Shown piece after piece: positions 10,201-24,233 of a stretch of DNA of 64,000 nt (within the stretch, counting starts at the first letter, position 1; every line of letters begins with the position of its first letter). Below the pieces are notes generated by a model. That model was given only the letters and a program-made list of their open reading frames with translations. It was not told the DNA's origin and did not search any database. The translations under genes were made by a program, and so were the position numbers. The stretch covers positions 310,001 to 374,000 of the forward strand of contig NW_027271626.1 in NCBI RefSeq assembly GCF_040938485.1. The letters are read 5' to 3'. The DNA is from Diadema antillarum. Lineage: Eukaryota.

Positions 10201-11186
10201 CCTGCATCACAGTTCACTGCATGTTATGTAATCAAACTACAGAACCCTTCCAAACTGCATTGTCCTAAATATTCTGATCAAAAAAGGAAGAGAAAAGTGC
10301 AGAGGATGTACAGACAGAGTCTCGGCAGTGGAAATACGCAGAAACCGGGTACAACATCCTGGACACGGGCAAATCACTTTCATTCATGAAGGTTAATTAA
10401 TCCTATCAGAGTCCACTACTCACTGACAACCACTGGTGTTTTGTAAACCAACAGGCTGCCAATGGGGATAAAAAGGTTTTACAATCAAGCTGCCGCACTA
10501 ATTCAAATCATGTCCTAGCATGCATAGTAAAAACGTGAGTGCAGTGTTTAACTAATACTCACATGGGACTCTAAACCCCAGAAAGCAATTTCCCCCTTAA
10601 AGAAAAATTGTCTTCTGTTTACTGCTATAATATACTCTCAGCTGTGTACTTCAGAAGCCAATACACACCTTATCACCGTCCCCCAACAATAAACACACAG
10701 TATACCACATTTACAATACCCTAAATACCTGTAGGTAATAAGTATTAAAATGCTGATGTGTGTGATCTTTGTAGTTCTGTGTGAAGGTGAAACCAGTGCT
10801 GTGAGAGAGAAATCAAATCAAAGCCTTCCGCTCAAGACAAATTTGCCCGTCATGTTCAAATTCAAATAATCATCACTTTTTTACTTTGTTCTAAATATAC
10901 TTCTCCTCTAATTTTACCCAAAATGAAACTGATTCGCTTTGATATTCACACTATTCATTCTATTTCTTTGAGCTGAATTTCTTATTTTTCACAAATTCAT
11001 TTTTTTTATCCCTTATTTGAGATTCACATGAAGATTTGCAGAATGAGGGATACTACATTTTAAAAGACCTGTAATAATGACAGACAGTCAACTACTTTCA
11101 TTTTTCTGAAGTAACTATATGATAATCTGATTCTTTTTCCGTGTCATTCTGTTTTCTTGTACGAACATTTGAGCGGCTAATGACTG

Positions 11187-11490
11187 CAGAGACTCCAACT
11201 CTCCCGTTTTCGACGGGAGATCTCCCGCCGAAAACCTATTTTTGCAAAATCTCCCGTTCTCCCGTTTGAGATTTGATTTCTCCCGCCCTGGCTCTGTGTC
11301 TCCCGTTCGAAAGGATTTCTTACTTATTGCTATTGTATGTTGCCAAAAATAAGCCTTATATAGCACCAGAGAGCATCTAGAACCTTGGGAACTTCGCGCT
11401 TCGCACACATCAACTTGGAGTCTCCCGTTTGCTAGGGGTTTCAGACGGGAGAATCTCCAGATCAGAAGGTGCTTTGGGTTGGAGTCTCTG
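11187..11490. mobile_element. MITE copy 1, 13-bp TIR CAGAGACTCCAAC, 6-bp TSD
   Basis: TSD TGACTG at 11181-86 and 11491-96. Internal repeated TCTCCCG motifs. Closely similar to 36093-36386. Confidence 0.9.
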
Positions 11491-13189
11491 TGACTGTACG
11501 TGGAAAAGCAAACATGCCACGACACTTGTCTAGCATTCCAGGAGTCATGGCTTGACCTTTGGAATTGGGTAGCTGGAATCACGCATGTTATTCTACGAAG
11601 CCATTCATTGTGCAGATCAGGATGAAAAAAATGCCACAGCATATTTGCATTATACACACAAAGTAGCCAACCTTCTGCACTTTCTCTCTCCAAACTGCTT
11701 CTGTGTACAAAGCCAGATGGACCAAAAAAAGCTTGAACTTGGAATGAGTTGAATGACACATGACCACATCACCATCACCCAGGTATGACAGCAAGGGTAA
11801 ACTGAAAAAAAAATATTGGGCAGTTTACCACCAGCAATAATAATGACATGCTATTTACAATGGCACAGTCTCTATCCGTATGTACACAAGTGGCGGTTAA
11901 TTACCACAGTCTATTGATCTTTATGTTGGCATGAATGCAGGTTCTGAGGTTAATAACCTCCTTGCATCACTGTTGACCCCTAAAAAAAAAAAATAATAAT
12001 AATAATAATAATTGTGTCATCTCTCCAACTTTCAACAAATGCTTCTTTCCTACATCAGGCAATTAATGGTGAATACATCATTCACTTAAATATAAAGCCT
12101 TAATGCAATTTTGGAAACTAATCTTTTTTTGTGCACATTATAGAATATGTGTTCTAAAAGGCTAGTAGTACAATTGCGCATTGTGGATGAAAAGAATGAA
12201 CAATGTGAAAAATAAGTTTTCATACTTGCTCAAGCAAGATGAAGTATAATCTAAACTCATAAAAGTGTGCACCAAATACTATTTTTCTTATTTTATGAAG
12301 AAAAAAAAAAACATCAACAACATAGCACCAAGATGCATGCCTACTGGTTATTCAGTTATTCTGTTTGTGAGAATGTGATTGGCAAGTTGGGTTGTAGAAT
12401 AGTGTTGATGTCGGAGTTTTCCCTAAACACATGTCACTTACACAGTGTGCCATCTGTCTGAATGCGACTGAAAAATAAAAAAGAGTTCTGCCATATATTT
12501 TCCTATGGTTTCCACATACTACACTAACAGTATGTGAAATCTATGTACAGTCTGTGCATATCCGAGAGCTCTGTTTAATACTTGTAACCCTCTGGTGCTG
12601 CGATCATTGACGTAACACTACCAGCACTAACCGTGGTACTTACGTGTTGAAAAAGCATACAGTTTTGCTGTAGGTTGGTACTGAAAAGGTTGTAAAAAAG
12701 TCGTAGTTTTGCCGTTGATTGAAAGTAGACGATAATGAGCAAGACCTTTTGTTACTGTAATCCTTCCCTTTGTGCTCGCTCCATACAAATTCAAACAATA
12801 GGAACTATAGGCGATTTCCAGCAGAGGGGCAGACTCTGGTGTCCTAATTACCTTTTGTCTTGGTGCATCGACGCGTGCGTAAATTTCTAAAGATGATGGG
12901 AATAGGATTCACTATCGGTGTCACCAATTTTGTGGAGCCATGCTTCGCGGTCGCCGATCGGCGGATTTGTTGAACAGCGCGAAAATCTCGTGTCTTTCGA
13001 ATGCTGGTAGAACATAATTAATGTCTGTTAACGTCAAGAAAATAAAATCGATAAGGCGTCGTATGTGATGACAGGTGGGCAGTTACAGCTTCCCTTCAAA
13101 ACTTAGATATGTTTGCATCAGAAATAGGTTGAGGAATATCCCGATTTTGTAGTAAGATATATTTTCTTTGCGGGAAAATCGGCCACCAA

Positions 13190-14805
13190 AAAAAAAGTCG
13201 GATGTTTGCCTTTACTTTTGGAAATGAACAGCGGTAACTATCGGCTCCGTAAGATGCTGAAATAAATGTCAGATGTTTGCTTTTAATTTTGGAAATGAAC
13301 AACGGTAATATGCGACTCCGTATGATACTAAAATAGATGTCGGATGTTTGCTTATACCTTTGGAAATTAATAACGGTCAAGATTCATGCAGCTCCGTATA
13401 CGGTGCTAAAATTAATGTCAGACTTGATTTTGCGTTCGGAAATGAATAAGGATAACATTCGGTTCCAGACGATGCTGAAATAAACGTCGAATGTTTGCTT
13501 TGACGTTCGGAAAAGAATAGTAGTAATATTCAACTCCGTACGATGATAAAATAAATGCCGGATGTTTGCTTTTACGTTCGAAAGTAGATAGCAGTAACAT
13601 ACAGCTCCGGAAGATGATAAAAAAAATGTCGAATGATCCCTTTGACGTTCGGAAATGAATAAAATAATATTCAACTCCGTACGATGATTTAATAAAACAT
13701 ATCGGATGCGCTTTTACTTTCTAAAGTAAATAGCAATAACATTCGACTCCGGAAGATGCTAAAATGAATGTCAGATGATTGCTATACGTTCGTAAGTGAA
13801 TAGCAGTAATATTCTGCTCCATACGAGGCTGAAATACATTTGTAACTGTCGGACGTTTGCTTTTACATTTTGAAATGAATAACAGTAACATTTACCTGCG
13901 TTCGATGGTAAAATTAATGTTTGATGTTTGCTTTGACGTTCGGAAATGAATAACAATACTATTCAACTCCGTACGATGATAAAATAAATGCCAGATGTTT
14001 GTTTTTACGTTCGAAAGTAAATAGCAATAACATTCAGCTTCGGAAGATGCAAAAATTAATGTCGAATAATTCCTATGACGTTCGGAAATGAATAACCATA
14101 ATATTCAACTCCGTACGATGATTAGATAAATATCGGATATTTTCTTTTAATATCCTTTCGAAAGTAAATAGCAATAATATTCGGCTCCGGAAGATGACAA
14201 AATAAACGTCAGATGATTGATTTTACGTTTGGAAGTGAATAGCAGTTGAACATTCTGCTCCATATTCATGATGCTAAAATGTCAGATATTTGCTCTTATA
14301 ATATATATTTCGAAATGTAACATTCAGTAACATTCAGCTGCGTTTTATGGCCAAGTTAATGTCTGATGTCTGATGTCTGCCCTTACGTTCAAAATGAAAA
14401 ACAGTAACATTCGGTTCTGTACGATGCTAAAATAATTGTCAGATGATTCATTTCACTTTCGGAAGTGGACAGCAATAACGGTAATATTTTGCTCCGTACG
14501 ATGCTAACATAAATAACAGATTGTTGTTTTTACATTTGGAAATTATTAATGGTATCAATCGGCTCAGTTAAATGCTAAAATAAATAGCGGATGTTTTCTT
14601 TCACGTTCGGAAATGAATAAGGATAGCATTCCGCTCCGTAAGATGCTAAAATGAATGTCGGTTAATACATTTGAAAATGAGTAACGGTAACATTCGGCTC
14701 CGTTAGGTGTTAAAATACAAATGTTGGATGGTTGCTTTTACAATCAGAAATGAATAACAGTAACTTTCGGCTCTTTACAATGCTATAAATCAAATGTCTG
14801 ATGTT
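13190..14805. repeat. Degenerate ~71-bp minisatellite (~23 copies) inside the CACTA element
   Basis: Unit approx. ctccgtacgatgctaaaataaatgtcagatgtttgcttttacgttcggaaatgaataacagtaacattcgg. ctccg anchors at 13245 and 13316 are 71 bp apart. Confidence 0.9.
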
Positions 14806-17507
14806 TAAAAACGTCTGCAAATGCTCCCACTTTCTCATTTCAAACGTAAGTCTTGACCACCTAAATATAGGCACAAATTTTATATAATGATCAATAAGCC
14901 TATACTTGCTAAATCTTAGAACTCAGAATATCGGTAAGATGATTGAATTTTCTATTCATTTATTTTAGACATGGGTACCTATCACTTCAGTAATACTTAA
15001 TATGCATTTGTCTGTGTTAAGTGGGACCAATTTCGTTTTTCTTATGTTTTTCTTTATTTTTTTTCGTGCCACAAGAATTTTCTTTCGGGCCACCGAAAGA
15101 TAAAAATCAATGATTTTTGTGACGAAAGTCGGATAGCGAAATTGTCACTGCATGCGTGTTTAGAATGAGATTAGAAAATGCCATCAATTACTAGACTTTG
15201 ACCATAATCGTCTGAAATGGATATCAAAAGACAAAAGATGCCCTACATTTTTCCCCCTCCGTTCGGCTTATTCAAAATATGAACATATACACTGACAAAA
15301 AGATGTGATGTTTGAGTTTTCTGCAAAAACGTGTGACTGAAACTATTGAATCGTTTTACTAGATTGAAAACAGTTTTATGAAATAAAAACAACGTTTTTA
15401 TGTCTCTTTCCACCACTCTTACATATGTTTTTGATTCAAAAGTGAAAAAAAAAAAAGGTTCGCATGGCACCGATGTCCGTTTTTACCTTTACGATGTTAC
15501 TTTACGATTTACAAGCTATCGCAGCCATCAGGCATTATGCCATATACATTGCGTCTTGCATGAACTTCAAATGGTTGGATATTTGTTCCTGATGCCCTTC
15601 CTCCTATATACGTATAATACTGTTAAGTATACCATCATCAACTATTTTTGAACTTTCTAACAACGACTTCATTCACTCATTATTTGTGGCACTTTTCTGA
15701 CAATGGCCACCCTGGCTCGAATTGAGTGTTGTTGCGTCGGACAGACTCTGGAAAGCGGCCCATTGTCGTACGTGTTGTCTCTCCGTATAAAGGTCATCTT
15801 TCTTTTAGCGGTCAAACCTTTCATCCCATCGAACGGTCCTGACCTGGACCCTAATCTTGCCGGTGCTTATACGCACATAGAGGAGAAAAATTCTTTTGTC
15901 CTTAATTCGTGCCGATTTCTTTGGTGATGATGAGCCAAACATGAGCCAGGCCTGTAGGCCTAATAGGCCCTATTATAATAAAGACAGCAAGCAATTACGA
16001 TGTCTGTAGCATACATCCGCTCTTTCTTGCCATTCTTAAGTTTGAATTCTTTTGTTTAGTTCAATTGCCCAAGCTAGTGACTCATGCTAAGGAGATTTAA
16101 ACTTTGATGGTTACTCATCTTCTCCTTTATCTGCATGTTTTCAAACTCTTGAAATTATAAGCATAGCGTAATAAGGTGAGACATGGCTGTACCATTCCTC
16201 TATATATCGTGACACTACACGTGGGGAAAGAAACTCAGCTTTTAATTTTTTTTTTCACAGAAAGCATTTTATTTATTTATTTTTTGGTTTGTTTCAGAGA
16301 CGTTTTACCCTACGAACTGAAATCTGTCTGGGGAAATATAGGGCCTATATGTGTAGCCGTTATCGAGCTGTTGCTGTGCGTAATGTTCGCAAACACGTGC
16401 TTCCACTTCTAACCGCGCCACGTGTTGGCTTCATTGCCAACATTGCGACGGACGGTACTTCATTTTTCGTATGCGTTCGATAAGGAAGGAAATTAAGTCC
16501 TCTGCCGAAATCGTAAATAGCGATGGTCTACTTGAATAGTGTTGTGATTAATACTACAAGGTTGCAAGTTCGAATTTCTTTCAGTTTTCAGAAGTAATAT
16601 ACATTTTGTTTTTGTTTTGTTGTTGTTTTTCTGAGCATAAGATTACAAGAGAGTTGCATTGCCACGATCATGCCGTGTAAAGTAGATGGCAGAATTCACC
16701 TATCTGCAGCAGAGCCGCTGTCTACCACCCGAAACATTCAGCATGTTTCCACAGAGAATCCGATTTGGTTTGCTTGCGCGCCATGCCTTGTGTATTCAGC
16801 ACAACAGTTCAGCGTCGCTAAGCTACATTTGCCTAAGCATACGGCCACGTGTATTTTCGTTGGTCATGTGGAATGTAGTTACATGCTAGTCTTTTTGCAG
16901 GGGTAGATTGATATGATTATGTGTGATGAATTATTGACTACCGGTATTCGCTGGTTTATGTTACAAACGTAAAAGAAAGGAGAATAGAATAATTTCGTAT
17001 TGCAATGCCCGAGGCCTTTGACTCGAGACTAGCTGGGAAGACTGTTCATTCCTCCGCTGTTTCCCAGGCTCTTTTGTCAAGGAATGATAATTATGCGCGC
17101 GTGTTCTTCTGTTTGAACGCCGCGTGTTCGTAAGAAATGTCCAGTACATCTGTATCTTTTTTTTTCTCTCTCTGCTTGCGTAATGAATGTATTAAAAGTA
17201 CTTCACATCGAACCTCGGTGTTATTCTTGCGTTAGCCAGCGCGCTTCGTCCTCGTCTGTACCAGTATAAGGGCCTTTACAAAAAAAGAAAAAAAAAAAAA
17301 AAAGGGGGGGGGGGTGGTAATTGTCGAACCTTCAAAAATACGATTAGCATTATCGACCTACAAATAAGGCATATAGAAATGAGTACAACTTTCTTGAAAT
17401 TACTGCAGCAAACTGGAAAAAATTTACGAATATGAACACAGAACACTCGTAATCACGATTTTACTTTGAAGTGGACAGGAAAAAGATTAAACGCAATAAA
17501 GAAAGAA

Positions 17508-17600
17508 ATGATGATGATGATGATGATGACGACGATGATGATGATCAACAGCATTTGTATGGCGCCATATATCTTTTATAGAAACATTCAAACGCGCAGA
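17508..17600 (-). mobile_element. Probable 3' end of an L2/CR1-type LINE or SINE with (ATC)n tail, inside the CACTA element
   Basis: Minus strand reads ...ggcgccatacaaatgctgttg(atc)n, resembling typical L2-type 3' ends. Confidence 0.35.
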
Positions 17601-18598
17601 CTCCTTAGCAATTGAATGCCTGGAGAAAAAAAAAAAAAATCAGAGGCTTTGAGGTGATCCAGTTAGTCAATTTCACGTAGAAAAGATGGGAGGGAGTTCC
17701 ATATCACACATAGGCGAGGAGCACTAGAGGAAAATGCCCGGTCTCACCAAAAGACGTATATATACTACGTTGTTTGTTCATACAGTTTTCTCAATATTTT
17801 AGATCAATTTCGTTATGTATAAGCATTTTGTTTTTTGTTGTATTTAATTTGTTCTGATAAATTATCGTATTTGATTATTTTATGGTTGTATTATACGGTA
17901 TACTGTTCATGCTGGTTATGTAACAGCGCCATGAGCATCATTCTTGATGGACTTCAGTGCATTGTAAGAGGCCACTATTATTATTTTTTTTAAATCATTA
18001 GTATCATTATCATTACTGTAAAAAAACAAAACACTGTAAAACAAAAGTCGAGTGATTTGATTTTCATTCATTTTTCAACAATAGGTCAGTATGGCCGATT
18101 TCTGTTCGCGCATTCCCGAATAGGCTTGTATGTAGGCCTACAGCTCATCTTTTTGAAGCAAGGGATGGCAAAAAGATGTTTCATCGTACGGAGTAGGCCT
18201 ATTTGGCCTACTAGTATACAATGTACACTGTATCTCACTTGGCGGTGACTGTTTACATACGTATAACTAATTTAAGGTTTAGTCAAGGTTCGTAAACAGT
18301 TGCAATTCGAAATTGTATATACGCAAACGATTTTCATCGTCTTAAACAGTGTTTTCTTTTCGTCTTGCTGCAAAGACGTTTGGTCATATAGGTCTACAAA
18401 TTTTTTTTGGCGACATGCACGACAATGCAAGCCATATATCTTAGAATTTGATTGCAACTGTTTTCGAATCCTGCAGACGAAAGTTTAAATTCACAATGTT
18501 CGCAAACGTTCGCAGCTCAGTGAGAGACTCTTGAGACCAGCCCAGCTTGGATAAGGTTAGTGTATTCGATAATCCCCGTAAGGAAATGTGTGCAGCTT

Positions 18599-18763
18599 CA
18601 GTGGCGGATCCAGGTGGAGGCACACCGGGTGCCCCCTCACCCTTATTTTGGTTTAAAAAAAAAAAAGAAATAAAAAGAAAAATGGAGTTGGCGCGTTCGT
18701 CCCCCGACACGTTCTAATTTTGTAAAGGCGTCCCTCTTTGCGGAATTCCTGGATCCGCCCCTG
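18599..18763. mobile_element. 165-bp MITE nested in the CACTA element
   Basis: TIR CAGTGGCGGATCCAGG / CCTGGATCCGCCCCTG, flanked by the direct repeat AGCTT (18594-98, 18764-68). Confidence 0.8.
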
Positions 18764-21700
18764 AGCTTTATCACTCATCTCTGCATGAGGTGAGTATTAA
18801 CTCATTAACCAATTCTCCGTTTAATGAGTTCACAACAGCAGAATAATTATGTCGACGAAGGTATACCACCGAGCATACGCTTCAATGCACATGCCGACAG
18901 GTGTAATCTTTGTTCGTCTCTACATCTTCCCTGAGAACAAAAGGAGAACAGTTTCCTTTCAAGGTAGAGCCGTGTGGCTTACACCGACCAGGGAAGGTGG
19001 CCCGAGAAGAAGAAACAACTCTCCTTTGAAGTCATGCTCGACACCGTAGAACGTTACGCGTTCAACACTACGCGTAGCCATGTGCTTTGAAAAGAGAGAG
19101 TGCATCATGCGGTAAGCAGGACTTGAATTGGAGTAGAGAATCAAAATGCAGTGTAAAACTGTCGATTTTGACGCCAAAGAGTTTAAAAAACACGCTAGAA
19201 CATACTTCGGCGGAGCACTTTCTTTGAAAAATCACAACATTACAGATATGATAAACAATCAAAAATTACATGTAAGCAAAAAGTTTGCATCATGGATAAT
19301 TATAAATGTCTTTAAAAAATCTAGTATTAATGGCATTTCGAAGAAACTAGAAATACATGTTTATGAATTCCAAATCGAGCATTTCATTTAAGATTTTCCG
19401 GTAAAATATAGCTTGTAATTCAATGAAATTCGAAGCGCGTTTTTCGTCTCACAGAGTGGTGTCGGGCATGACTTCATTAACGTAGCCTATGAATGTTGGA
19501 CATCTTATATGGTATAAAAATGCATTGAATATGCATTGTGTTTGTCTGAATTACGAAGAGTTGCCACTCCGTCTACACCCCCCAGCTGCACAGACCAAAG
19601 AGGACACACAGCTCTAAAATTTTCTCACAGAGATGAGTGTTTTCCTATAAAATTTGAAAAAAATAATCCATTATAACGAACCCCTCCTTTATGATAATAA
19701 TTTATGTAAGCTTTTCCGACTATGATCGATTCATCGACGACATTAATTGTTTATGAAAATATTTGATATTATACTTTGATGAATAATATTATGAAAACTG
19801 ACTTCATGACACAGGAGACAGCAAAATGTTCTCGAAATCCAGTTGGAACTAAACTTGAAGGGGATATAGAGATGAAATGACAATGTATACAGGCAAACAT
19901 GAATTAAAAACGCATTCATTCATTTTCCACTGCACCCTTATAGATTTGTGCCCGACAAGATACACATTTTCGAACTGATGATTAAAATCGTAGACTGTTT
20001 GCCCCTCGCGCTATGCGACTGGTAGAAATCATATCTTGCACGCGTGTCTCTTAAAATAGTCGACATATTCCAAACTCGTCCATTATAGTCATGGAGCTGT
20101 TAAAAAAAAAGCTGAAGAAAAAATGATGTATACAATTTACTCGCGTAGTTGACATTCGTCACTGATAAGGGATAACCGCATCAGGTACAGAAGTCGCATA
20201 TATCAGATCTCGAGAAAAAAAAAGAAGAAAAAAGGGAGAAAGTAGGTGTCAAAGATGTCTGAGGGGAATCATTCTGCTAATCGTGGATTGTATAAGAAAA
20301 CGTGGAAATAACCGCGGGACAATCGGTGGCTGCTTTTACATTTCGATTGAATCTATAGTGTGTGTAAAAAAAATTTTATGGTGTGCATGAATTACAATTC
20401 TCTGAAGAGCTCATGTTTAAGCGTGTGACGTTCACTCCTGCTGCAATGGAGAGGGTTATAATAACGATATTTTGCGATAACGAAGTAATTCATAATTAAA
20501 GTTGCCAAATTTGTCGACATTAAAAACAATTGTGTGAAATTATTACGAACACTTTTGTATAAGAACACGGTTACAGCAAAATTCTTGTTGAAACAAAGTC
20601 ATTTCCGAGCGTCATTGGCAAAGAACAAAAGAAACATGCTCCGTTCCTATGAGATGCCACTCCTCGCTTTCCTACATTGTACAAGAAGAAATTCACGGAG
20701 ACTGCATGAGCGAACGCTTGTTATTTATATTCGTTCACTTTTCCCCGTGGATAACTTGCATTGTATTAATCAAAAGTGAATATTAGGGATCGTTATCACG
20801 AACATTATCTTATGGCGTTTGTCCAAAGGTTCGTCATTCGTATACGGTTCATCACTGCGAAAATGAAATCAGGTTTTTTAATCCGAAAATGATAAGAATC
20901 TTCGTTATTCCAAAGATTCGCCGATATGAATATGAATTAAGATTCGTGAATCCAAACGTGAAAAAAAAAAGAAAGGAGTACACAGACACAATTTTGGAAT
21001 TACAAATCTAAATCATTGTCTTCGTTTCTACAGCAAAGTTACGCCTTGCAGAACCTTATTTCATTTTCGGATTAACCAAGCTTTTGAATTACGAATCCTG
21101 GGAATATCGAATCTTCGGAACGATCCTCCGAAACACGTCGGGAATAATGAACGTTCGTAAACGTTCGTAATCGACGAACTTTGGAATAACGAATCAGGCC
21201 TATAAACACATTCCTAACCATCACTTCACTTTTATATACATTTTTTTTTTCAAACTAAGCATGAAAGTACAAACTATACTCTGTTTGAAATCTGTTTCAA
21301 ATTGCCTTTTCATCCAGTGCAGCGTATTTGATATGACCAAATATTACTAAGCATTGAATTACGCATCATACGTATCGTTGCCGTCTTTTTTTTTTCTTCA
21401 TAACATACTCAGAACTGTATTCGTTCGATAAGACGAAATGTCGTTATACTTTTTTTATGAAATTGCCGATCCCTAGGACTTCGATTATTTATAACTGGAA
21501 TGCAGTGTATACAAAATAGGCACGGTCAGACTGGCAAAAGATCGAGAAGTTTAACATCGCGATCTTTATAAGATCTCGAAGTTTTGCCCGTCTGATGTTT
21601 CCCTGGGTAAAATTCGACCACCGCTGAATTCTCACGTGACTACTAGTACCCCCGTTTATGGATGCACGACGTGCGTTGTTGCCTTGACACACGATGAGCA

Positions 21701-23538
21701 AAAATGGACTGTCACATGCATGTGCGCACCGTGTGTATACAGTACGACGGACCATCGATTACGGTACATGTAATTTATCAGGTGCATCAGCGCTATGAAT
21801 GTATGCAGTCTGTACTTCGATCGACTGTACAAACGGTTGCGGTATACTAATACAATTAACAGTTGTACCAGCTCGTTTAGCTGACCAGATGAGCTCGAAC
21901 TGTAGGTATACGACCGCCAAAAGAAATCTATTCTTCTCCGTCAGATTTGCTCGAACTTGGCCCCATTTCGTACTCGTTTGAGGCGCGGCCACGATTAGTA
22001 AAAAGCTGAGAGCTATTCCCCTATACTAGCTAGCCGCAATAACGAAGCCACATTGTGTGCGCGAATGGATTTTACCTGCCGATGCATTGATGGCTAGAAC
22101 AATATTAGTAGTCCAGAGAATCATTTAAGCCGATAATTAAGTCATGAAATAGTAGTTGGCTGTTCGTAGAAAAGTCGTAGTTTTGAGGGAACTGCCCTTG
22201 AGGAAAATAGAAGTGGTATCAAAAGACGGATTATCGCCGTGAATAGCTAGTGGTCTATTGTCCGATTTTCACACTGCATAACAAAAGACGGCGTTCTCGG
22301 TCGCGAGAGCGGAGATGCGGAAGTCGTCTTTTGTGATGTGGCAAAACTACGACTTTCGTACGACTAAATCCTCACTAATCCACCCCTGATCTACAACCAC
22401 TTAACAATTTATCTACGCCTCTTTCACTTCTTAACAACGACGCATTCAACACTAAGGCACGAACACAAAGAACCACGGCAAAACTACGACTTTCTTACTA
22501 CTTTTTCAGTAGCAATCTACAGCAAAACTGTGTGCCTTTTCAACACGTAAGTACCACGGTTAGTGCTGGTAGTGTAAATCATCTTTGAAGATGTCAAATC
22601 AAGTGATTACAGTTACAGCAACACTTTCATAGACCATGCTGAATTACTCTGGATCCAGCACATCCTGTATTTCAAAATGGGTCGAGCAACATTAACAACA
22701 AACACAACCAAAACAGGCAATAAAAATACAGAAATAAAGGAATTACATGATATATTGCCTACAAGAATGATCTTGTCTGTAGCTAATGCCTACATTTTCA
22801 TGGATTTAGACTTGGGGGGGGGGGGGAGGGGCAGTTTTGGGGTCAATTTATTCTCTCACAATATTGCAGGGTATTGATATAGTCTGCCCCGACCATGACA
22901 TGATATATAACAAACATATTTAACCATCACATTCACAAGCCATGATTAATTTCCTGTGGTACCGACAGTCTTTCCCAGAATACAAATGGCGGGGGGGGGG
23001 GGGGGGGGGGGGATGTAAGGGAGAGAAAGGCTTTTATCTCCCATGTCCTGTTGCGTCCCTGACTTTCAGTCTTCCATGGGGTTAATGCCCTCCACTGGTG
23101 TGTGAATACGACCCACTGTAATTATGCGATATATCCAGTAGTGGTAATCATATCACACATCCTATGCTTCTGAGGTGTTTGCCTGTATTTACATGGACAG
23201 CCCAGTGTTTGAGCAATTTTTAAACTTCTTATAATACAATGTAGGCAAACAATAATAACACAAAACTCCTCATTACAAAGCTAAACACATTATTACACCA
23301 GTAGCCATTTCACTCAAATTCTTTTTCCTTTTTTTTTCCTACAACTATAATACATGTGTATGTTTAACTACAGTAATGATAATAATATCATAACTCAAAG
23401 GCAAGAACTGATGAAATATCTTTAGGGATTCTCCATTTAGGGCACTACTCCATGTTGGCAACACAGCAACACAACAAAAACAAAAAACAAAACAACAAAA
23501 AACAAAAACAGACTGGTGACCATTTCTTAGTATTTTAC

Positions 23539-23658
23539 CTTCTGCAGTTTCTCCAGACTTTTGATGTATTTCCTCTCACTTTCCAGGATACCATTCAGCA
23601 GGAGGCGTCTGATGCTGAGACTCTCCACCTCTGGTGTCGACAGCTTCACTGAATCTCC
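23539..23658 (-). CDS. BCR: BCR/ABR exon, start of DH (RhoGEF) domain (120 nt; GDSVKLSTPEVESLSIRRLLLNGILESERKYIKSLEKLQK)
   Basis: Acceptor catacag|GGA, donor AAG|gtaaaa, phase 0/0. RRLLLNGILESERKYIKSLEKL matches the first DH helix (BCR: RKWVLSGILASEETYLSHLEAL). Absent from the ORF track because it is under 60 aa. Confidence 0.9.
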
Positions 23659-24233
23659 CTGTATGATGAAACATCATGCAAAGTATTGATATCATATCTA
23701 GCAAAACATCTTGCTCGCAAATTGAAATTCATGGTATTATGAGGGTTCACCACCAACCATTAGTATAGGATGAGTCCCATCATAGTTTGATATAGGCCTT
23801 ATCAATTTCATTAGCTCTAGATGGAGCAAGGTATACACTAGGCATTTCAACATCAGCCCAATGTTTCGAAATAGCATACTACTTACTCGAGCTTAGACTT
23901 TCATAACCCAATGGCTAAATGGTAGGATGTTTTGTGATACAACTGACCTACACATATTTATCAAAAGTGATATCTTGAACATTTTCAAAATTACTGCTCT
24001 CAAAGGTAAACAGGACCTTTAAAATATTGATGGATACATTCCTCTGAGAACCTTGTGATGAACTATTTCATCCAAGTGCTCACACTTGATGCATTTCAAT
24101 ACTTGGAATGCAAATTGCATGCATTACATGTTGTTATATCAGGCAAGTCACCGCACTTTCTGGTTTCAGGAAAACCAAAAAGTAAAGATTTGTATGCATG
24201 AAATTTGAATACATTAGTAAAGCTGTTCCTTAA

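What the first reader, a model, noticed from the sequence alone, without database searches (positions are those of the whole stretch)
12613..22577. Intact-ended 10-kb CACTA/EnSpm element with no recognisable transposase, inside a DH-domain intron
Seen: exact CACTA/TAGTG termini, 3-bp TAA TSD, ~100-bp TIRs, repeated subterminal AAAGTCGTAGTTTTG motifs, and an interior visibly richer in CpG than the flanking intron. It makes up about 45% of the 22-kb intron between two DH exons. Established: CACTA termini with 3-bp TSDs define plant-type En/Spm elements, which can carry captured sequence; animal CMC elements are less well catalogued. Inference: a fairly young non-autonomous element carrying ~8 kb of unexplained cargo, possibly polymorphic.
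Basis: partly seen in the sequence, partly recalled or inferred. Interest (0 to 1): 0.7.

Follow-up and report, generated by a model that had tools for sequence, protein, structure and literature searches.

The report
Young gene-less CACTA-type jumping element
This is a real 10-kb cut-and-paste DNA transposon that encodes no enzyme of its own. It jumped into an intron of a RhoGEF gene so recently that the matching site on a second, about 96% identical contig is still empty. It is a well-documented but ordinary kind of mobile element.

Summary
The element spans window 12616-22574 (9,959 bp). It has CACTA...TAGTG termini, 100-nt inverted ends (93% complementary), a TAA target duplication, four exact copies of AAAGTCGTAGTTTTG near the ends, and CpG o/e 1.25 against 0.32-0.38 in the flanking intron. 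It fills 45% of a ~22-kb intron between two DH/RhoGEF exons on the minus strand.

The genome holds 63 such ends, about 31 copies, nearly all built on the same ~10-kb unit. All 10 copies fetched whole have 3-bp duplications of varied sequence. Contig C578 carries the precise empty site: flank, one TAA, flank. Two other young copies also lack a partner on the matching contig. The window copy differs from its closest sister by 7 substitutions in 10 kb.

I found no transposase. The open-frame spectrum is as random, the 40 longest frames outside the repeat array give no Pfam hit, and the genome's own CACTA-type transposases leave no trace inside. Longer copies hold nested retroelements.

The cargo is family-specific non-coding DNA: a 1.6-kb array of 71-bp repeats plus fragments of short high-copy repeats. 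An older subfamily carries at least the one tested 781-bp cargo segment.

Verdict: a recently active, non-autonomous CMC (CACTA/Chapaev-like) family whose helper transposase was not identified. It is a new member of a known kind.

The parts
12613..12615 (.). Left target-site duplication, TAA
   Evidence: The empty site on C578 has a single TAA.
12616..12715 (+). Left terminal inverted repeat, starting CACTACCAGCACTAACC
   Evidence: 93% complementary to the right arm. The 34-nt terminus occurs 63 times in the genome with at most 1 mismatch, against 0 for the control.
12697..12711 (+). Subterminal motif AAAGTCGTAGTTTTG, copy 1, inside the left TIR
13188..14806 (.). Array of about 22 tandem 71-bp repeats with 142-bp and ~430-bp higher order, about 5 CpG per unit
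   Evidence: CpG o/e is 1.4-1.7 here. Similar arrays (86-88%) also occur at loci outside the family; the first look gave 2242 candidates.
14807..22170 (.). Non-coding, family-specific cargo with embedded short high-copy repeat fragments (around 17500-17700, 17900-18100, 18500-18890, 19090-19690, 20880-21280, 21480-21680)
   Evidence: No frame above 102 aa and no Pfam hit. Segment 19700-20480 has 36 genome hits, all inside family copies. Depth spikes in contigs of other runs mark the short repeats.
22171..22185 (+). Subterminal motif, copy 2
22342..22356 (-). Subterminal motif, copy 3, inverted relative to copy 2 and 156 bp from it
   Evidence: (pair I10)
22479..22493 (-). Subterminal motif, copy 4, inside the right TIR
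22475..22574 (-). Right terminal inverted repeat, ending TAGTG
22575..22577 (.). Right target-site duplication, TAA
1084..1479 (-). Open frame holding the downstream DH/RhoGEF exon of the host gene (exon limits not mapped)
   Evidence: PF00621, E 8.4e-5, profile positions 20-91
23530..23673 (-). Open frame holding the upstream DH exon; contains RRLLLNGILESERKYIKSLEKL, which resembles the first DH helix
   Evidence: Motif scan. No Pfam hit on its own, so this exon is inferred.

Best explanation
Window 12616-22574 is one copy of a young, non-autonomous cut-and-paste DNA transposon family with about 31 copies on a ~10-kb unit. Its end structure is that of the CMC (CACTA/Mirage/Chapaev) superfamily. 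Shown: it inserted into a TAA in the intron of a RhoGEF gene and duplicated those 3 bp; the homologous contig still carries the unoccupied site; the copy is almost identical to a sister copy elsewhere. Inferred: a DDE transposase encoded elsewhere in the genome binds the 100-nt inverted ends and the subterminal AAAGTCGTAGTTTTG motifs. It excises the whole 10 kb and reinserts it with a 3-bp staggered cut. The ~8 kb between the ends is passenger DNA without coding capacity: a minisatellite, family-specific sequence and fragments of short repeats. Its high CpG content reflects a family that has not lived under germline methylation, now sitting in a CpG-depleted and presumably methylated gene body.
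For: Ends and TSD. Copies: 63 ends carry the 34-nt terminus against 0 for the control. TSDs: 10 of 10 fetched copies have matching 3-bp TSDs (TAA, TTA, ACA, TGA, AGA, ATT), and the 30 left-flank triplets are A/T-rich but not fixed. Empty site: C578 shows flank + single TAA + flank, with flanks 96-97% identical. The flanks of the C218 and C1702 copies recur on C8 and C99, which hold no element end. Age: 7 substitutions between the window copy and the C218 copy, and 3-102 private substitutions per copy. Diversity among copies is 0.7-0.8% in the terminal 500 bp and 1.3-2.9% inside, as expected if only the ends are needed in cis. No transposase: the longest frame is 109 aa and lies in the repeat array; the frame-length spectrum equals that of Markov shuffles (41 frames of 60 aa or more against 40.8 expected). 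The 40 longest frames outside the array give only noise against Pfam. tblastn of the genome's own Transposase_21-bearing frames against 10 copies gives a best E of 0.4. A six-frame PF02992 search of the whole genome scored all 23 candidates and none lies in a family copy. Longer copies owe their length to nested retroelements where coding capacity was found. CpG: only 23 of 299 private substitutions are CpG transitions, although CpG sites make up 9% of bases.
Against: No autonomous partner was found. No other sequence in the genome carries the 34-nt terminus with 3 or fewer mismatches, or the 15-mer motif. The Transposase_21 loci I hold (3.4 kb each) show no similar terminus. Membership of CMC therefore rests on end structure alone. 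No RNA run was available, so a gene made of many short exons is not formally excluded. The older subfamily (85-88% identity) carries the one cargo segment tested; if the whole cargo is kept, that is unusual for pure passenger DNA.
Confidence: 0.8

Rival explanations
1. The 10-kb unit is autonomous. It encodes its transposase in many short exons that escape an open-frame scan and Pfam searches of single frames.
For: Sea-urchin genes often have short exons (own knowledge). All ~31 copies keep the full 10-kb unit, and the older subfamily carries the tested cargo segment. No partner was found. No RNA data could be consulted.
Against: The frame-length spectrum is indistinguishable from shuffled sequence. 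The 40 longest frames give no family hit. The genome's own CMC transposases have frames of 383-873 aa in most loci, and they find nothing in the element. Indels are spread along the whole interior of the copies, with a 1-16% gap fraction in almost every 500-column bin.
Confidence: 0.07
2. It is a non-autonomous element of another superfamily that also makes 3-bp duplications (PIF/Harbinger, Zator or Academ). The CACTA start would then be coincidental.
For: 9 of 30 target triplets are TTA or TAA, the Harbinger and Chapaev3 consensus TWA (PMC4079192 for Chapaev3). The transposase is unknown.
Against: 21 of 30 triplets are not TWA (AGA, TGA, ACA, CAT, TCA and others). Termini 5'-CAC...GTG-3' with 3-4-bp TSDs are the stated hallmarks of Chapaev/CMC (PMC4079192). 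Long TIRs with direct and inverted subterminal motifs are the classic CACTA layout (own knowledge).
Confidence: 0.1
3. It is not a mobile insertion. It is a segmental duplication or an assembly artefact, and C578 is a deletion allele.
For: The assembly (1.75 Gb, 2,963 contigs) seems to hold both haplotypes, so duplicated contigs are common.
Against: The difference between the contigs is exactly TIR to TIR plus one TSD copy. About 31 dispersed copies have different flanks and matching 3-bp TSDs.
Confidence: 0.01

Closest known systems
CMC superfamily: plant En/Spm (CACTA) and animal Chapaev/EnSpm-like elements, including their large non-autonomous derivatives
   Same: 5'-CACTA...TAGTG-3' termini, a 3-bp target duplication, long TIRs, a short CpG-containing motif repeated in direct and inverted orientation near both ends, and a large internal region unrelated to the transposase. 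The hallmarks 5'-CAC/GTG-3' and a 3-4-bp TSD are as given in PMC4079192.
   Different: No transposase and no remnant of one. No autonomous relative sharing the ends was found in the same genome. Targets are A/T-rich but not the strict TWA reported for Chapaev3 (PMC4079192).
PIF/Harbinger non-autonomous elements
   Same: A 3-bp duplication, often TTA or TAA.
   Different: Most targets are not TWA, and the termini are CACTA rather than the G-rich Harbinger ends (the latter from own knowledge).
Transib / ProtoRAG elements of sea urchins
   Same: Ends starting with CAC in an echinoderm genome.
   Different: Those make 5-bp duplications (own knowledge). Here 10 of 10 are 3 bp.

Membership tests
CMC (CACTA/Mirage/Chapaev) DNA transposons | Termini 5'-CAC(TA)...(TA)GTG-3' | tested here: met
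   CACTA at 12616 and TAGTG ending at 22574. All 63 ends in the genome are identical or differ by one base.
CMC (CACTA/Mirage/Chapaev) DNA transposons | Target-site duplication of 2-4 bp (3 bp for CACTA and Chapaev) | tested here: met
   10 of 10 copies have matching 3-bp TSDs. The empty site has one copy of TAA.
CMC (CACTA/Mirage/Chapaev) DNA transposons | Subterminal short repeats in direct and inverted orientation | tested here: met
   Four exact 15-mers, one at the left end and three at the right.
CMC (CACTA/Mirage/Chapaev) DNA transposons | CMC-type DDE transposase (Pfam Transposase_21 or relatives) encoded by the element or by a partner with matching ends | tested here: not met
   None in the element. 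The genome has at least 15 Transposase_21 matches elsewhere, but none lies in a family copy. The 3.4-kb loci I hold around 12 of them show no similar terminus. Their real ends could not be fetched.
CMC (CACTA/Mirage/Chapaev) DNA transposons | Repbase rule for non-autonomous elements: same TSD length and terminal positions 1-11 aligned with an autonomous member, one mismatch allowed (PMC4455052) | not testable with these tools
PIF/Harbinger | 3-bp TSD with consensus TWA | tested here: not met
   Only 9 of 30 flanking triplets are TTA or TAA.
Non-autonomous transposon (operational definition) | Mobile (TSD, empty site, dispersed near-identical copies) but without coding capacity for a transposase | tested here: met
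   for mobility. for lack of coding capacity. RNA evidence was not available.

The most novel reading that the evidence does not exclude
The ~8 kb of CpG-rich non-coding cargo may not be a passive passenger. The young subfamily and an older one (85-88% identity) both carry the tested cargo segment, while no helper with matching ends is detectable. The family could therefore depend on an unrecognised kind of transposase. Or the cargo (the 71-bp CpG-rich array and the unmethylated island-like interior) could itself promote mobilisation or shield the element from silencing inside methylated gene bodies.
Probability: 0.08. Interest if true: 0.55.

Novelty: new member of a known kind. Interest (0 to 1): 0.3.

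Why it matters
The family gives a cleanly documented case of very recent, probably ongoing, DNA-transposon activity in a sea urchin. According to earlier notes of this scan, which I did not verify, the species is Diadema antillarum. Three of three tested insertions are absent from the matching contig of the same assembly, and sister copies differ by less than 0.1%.

Such insertions are useful as polymorphic markers. They also show that a 10-kb element can land in the intron of a RhoGEF gene and nearly double its length.

The contrast in CpG content, 1.25 inside against about 0.35 outside, makes this copy a natural probe. It could show whether gene-body methylation spreads onto newly inserted DNA. 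The unidentified helper transposase is the only real open question. Otherwise this is routine repeat annotation.

Tried and rejected
1. Longer copies (11.8-26 kb) as autonomous versions: rejected. Their extra DNA is nested insertions. Where coding capacity was found these are retroelements: a 7.3-kb LTR retrotransposon with a 1,550-aa pol-type frame, and a 2-kb reverse-transcriptase fragment. The other inserts have no frame of 150 aa or more.

2. The same LTR retrotransposon in two copies as proof that a 17-kb composite transposed: rejected. The two insertions have different 4-bp duplications, AAAT and ATAG, so they are independent events.

3. Remnants of the genome's own Transposase_21 proteins inside the element: none found; best tblastn E is 0.4.

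4. Partner search by terminus (34 nt, up to 3 mismatches) and by the 15-mer motif: only the family itself was found.

5. Rfam scan of the element: only two sub-threshold chance hits.

6. RNA evidence: no RNA run is on record, so splicing could not be tested.

8. Host-capture origin of the cargo: no source locus outside the family for the tested segment 19700-20480.

9. The two host exons were searched separately.

10. For one search I compared a 180-base flank + TAA + flank string, built inside the script from window letters, with locus L064.
Full report
**Observation.**
- The ends read ...gacg TAA CACTACCAGCACTAACC... at 12613-12632 and ...GGTTAGTGCTGGTAGTG TAA atc... at 22558-22580.
- The element proper is therefore 12616-22574 (9,959 bp), flanked by a TAA duplication.
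- The terminal inverted repeat is the longest in the region: 101 nt at 93% complementarity. One base of each arm belongs to the TSD, so the true TIR is 100 nt.
- The motif AAAGTCGTAGTTTTG occurs four times in the 64-kb window, all within the element. One copy is at the left end and three are at the right, two of them inverted.
- CpG o/e is 1.25 inside the element, against 0.32 and 0.38 in the left and right intron flanks. GpC o/e stays near 1 throughout.
- The host gene runs on the minus strand. The frame 1084-1479 matches the RhoGEF/DH domain (PF00621, E 8.4e-5). The frame 23530-23673 carries a motif like the first DH helix but gives no Pfam hit by itself.
The two exons were searched separately; I did not build a joined model.

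**Is it a transposon?**
- The 34-nt terminus occurs 63 times in the 1.75-Gb assembly with at most one mismatch. The reversed control occurs 0 times.
- The ends pair up into about 31 elements, most of them 9.9-10.3 kb long.
- I fetched ten copies whole. All ten have matching 3-bp duplications of different sequence: TAA, TTA, ACA, TGA, AGA, ATT.
- The 30 left-flank triplets are A/T-rich. TTA or TAA make up 9 of 30, but the triplet is not fixed.
- The left and right flanks of the window copy both recur on contig C578 at 96-97% identity, adjacent to each other.
- Read directly, C578 shows gcgatcattgacaTAAatcatctttg, that is flank, one TAA, flank.

**The assembly appears to hold both haplotypes.**
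- Transposase loci and old element copies come in pairs with identical flanks.
- I therefore read C578 as the other allele and the insertion as hemizygous. This reading is an inference.
- The flanks of two more young copies (C218, C1702) also recur on second contigs (C8, C99), up to the last base before the element. Neither of those contigs holds an element end.
- So three of three tested young insertions are absent from the matching contig.

**Age.**
- An alignment of ten copies, with nested insertions cut out, gives pairwise substitution diversity of 1.3-2.9% in the interior. In the terminal 500 bp on each side it is only 0.7-0.8%.
- This fits selection on cis-acting ends among lineages that kept transposing.
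- The window copy and the copy on C218 differ by 7 substitutions in about 9,950 bp. Private substitutions per copy range from 3 to 102.
- Activity therefore extended until very recently. The insertion is far younger than the 3-4% divergence between the two contigs at its flanks.

**Coding capacity.**
- No stop-to-stop frame exceeds 109 aa, and the longest frames lie in a tandem array.
- The frame-length spectrum matches second-order Markov shuffles: maximum 109 against a mean of 138, and 41 frames of 60 aa or more against 40.8 expected.
- The 40 longest frames outside the array give only unrelated noise against Pfam, with E above 0.03.
- A six-frame search of the whole genome with Transposase_21 (PF02992) scored all 23 candidates and gave 15 matches. 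Most sit in open frames of 383-873 aa, and none lies in a family copy.
- Those frames, searched by tblastn against ten element copies, find nothing; the best E is 0.4.
- The longer copies (11.8-26 kb) are longer because of nested insertions.
- One nested insertion is a 7.3-kb LTR retrotransposon whose pol frame has integrase before reverse transcriptase. Another is a reverse-transcriptase fragment.
- No RNA run is on record for this sequence. A gene made of many short exons therefore cannot be formally excluded, but nothing supports one.

**The cargo.**
- It begins with a 1.6-kb array of about 22 tandem 71-bp units (13188-14806), each with about five CpGs.
- The remainder is family-specific. 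Segment 19700-20480 has 36 hits in the genome, all inside family copies.
- Of these hits, 27 are at 92-100% identity and 7 are at 85-88%. The latter belong to an older subfamily that sits on both haplotype contigs. Two further short partial hits complete the 36.
- So, for the segment tested, the cargo is not a recent capture of a host gene, and it has been carried for a long time.
- Contigs of other DNA runs laid on 17100-23050 show narrow depth spikes around 18.7, 19.1-19.7, 20.9-21.3 and 21.5-21.7 kb. These mark fragments of short, very abundant repeats inside the cargo.
- The same runs show the element in samples labelled as three different organisms. Names were coded, so I draw no conclusion about its distribution.
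- One contig of run X2 begins exactly at 22575 with 31 letters that do not fit the element. This would suit an empty allele, but the letters were not shown, and the sample may be the one that was assembled.

**CpG.**
- Among 299 private substitutions in the ten copies, only 23 are CpG-to-TpG/CpA changes. CpG sites make up about 9% of bases.
- There is thus no sign of methylation-driven decay in this family, whereas the surrounding intron is strongly CpG-depleted.
- This agrees with the mosaic pattern described for most invertebrates, in which methylation concentrates on the bodies of transcribed genes and, in some species only, on transposable elements (abstract of PMC11292947, listed).
- The contrast is explained by youth plus an unmethylated family history. 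No special function needs to be invoked.

**Classification.**
- Termini 5'-CAC...GTG-3' with 3-4-bp duplications are the stated hallmarks of Chapaev elements within the CMC group (PMC4079192).
- Repbase classifies non-autonomous elements by termini, TSD and TIRs (PMC4455052).
- By those structural criteria this is a CMC (CACTA/EnSpm/Chapaev-like) element.
- The defining protein feature is not met. No partner with matching ends or motif was found: searches return only the family, and one search finds nothing in the transposase loci I hold.
Those are the next steps.

**Mechanism.**
- Shown: insertion with a 3-bp duplication, dispersed near-identical copies, an empty allelic site, conserved ends, and no coding capacity detected.
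- Inferred: trans-mobilisation by a DDE transposase encoded elsewhere, which binds the TIRs and the CpG-containing 15-mer and cuts and pastes the whole 10 kb.

**Verdict.** The finding is correct and well supported. It describes an ordinary class of object, a new non-autonomous family of a known superfamily. Two mildly unusual traits remain: a large cargo, at least one segment of which is long retained, and a helper transposase that is still unknown. Earlier notes of this scan name the genome as the sea urchin Diadema antillarum. I did not verify that.

Noticed in passing
L037:1499-8835 (C192 copy) and the C576 copy (L034-L036): The same 7.3-kb LTR retrotransposon family inserted independently into the 71-bp array of two different element copies. 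It has ~1.1-kb LTRs and a 1,550-aa frame with integrase upstream of RT-RNase H plus a SCAN-like domain. The two sites are only a few bases apart in repeat phase and have different 4-bp duplications (AAAT, ATAG). This suggests a target preference for this repeat.
   Followed up: partly
window 13188-14806; other loci such as G000:C300:828806-829502, C818:591457-592150, C154:412437-413133: The 71-bp repeat array is not confined to this family. A 701-bp piece has 2,242 first-look candidates in the genome, and at least 11 loci outside the family match it at 86-88% over its full length. This may be a sister transposon family or a transposon-derived satellite.
   Followed up: partly
whole assembly G000: Many loci occur twice with near-identical scores and identical flanks (Transposase_21 loci; old element copies on C48 and C245; window flanks on C578 at 96-97%). 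The 1.75-Gb assembly therefore seems to contain both haplotypes of a highly heterozygous individual.
   Followed up: partly
window 11118-11768 (-) and 36087-36458 (-): Two open frames (217 and 124 aa) share a closely similar peptide stretch (...TGD.EPGREK.NLKRENGRFCKN.FSAGDLPSKTGELESL...). They are probably copies of another repeat family in the host gene's introns.
   Followed up: no
window 18715-18763: A ~50-bp core inside the cargo has extreme depth in contigs of all four runs laid, thousands-fold over the flank, with loose ends on both sides. It is a fragment of a very abundant short repeat.
   Followed up: no
G000: C587:168419-171083 and its pair C1386:294082-296737; C980/C999; C51/C1436; C119/C1377; C278; C70: Several distinct Transposase_21 (CACTA-type) genes have long uninterrupted frames of 383-873 aa, each present once per haplotype. 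They are candidate helpers or domesticated transposases.
   Followed up: partly
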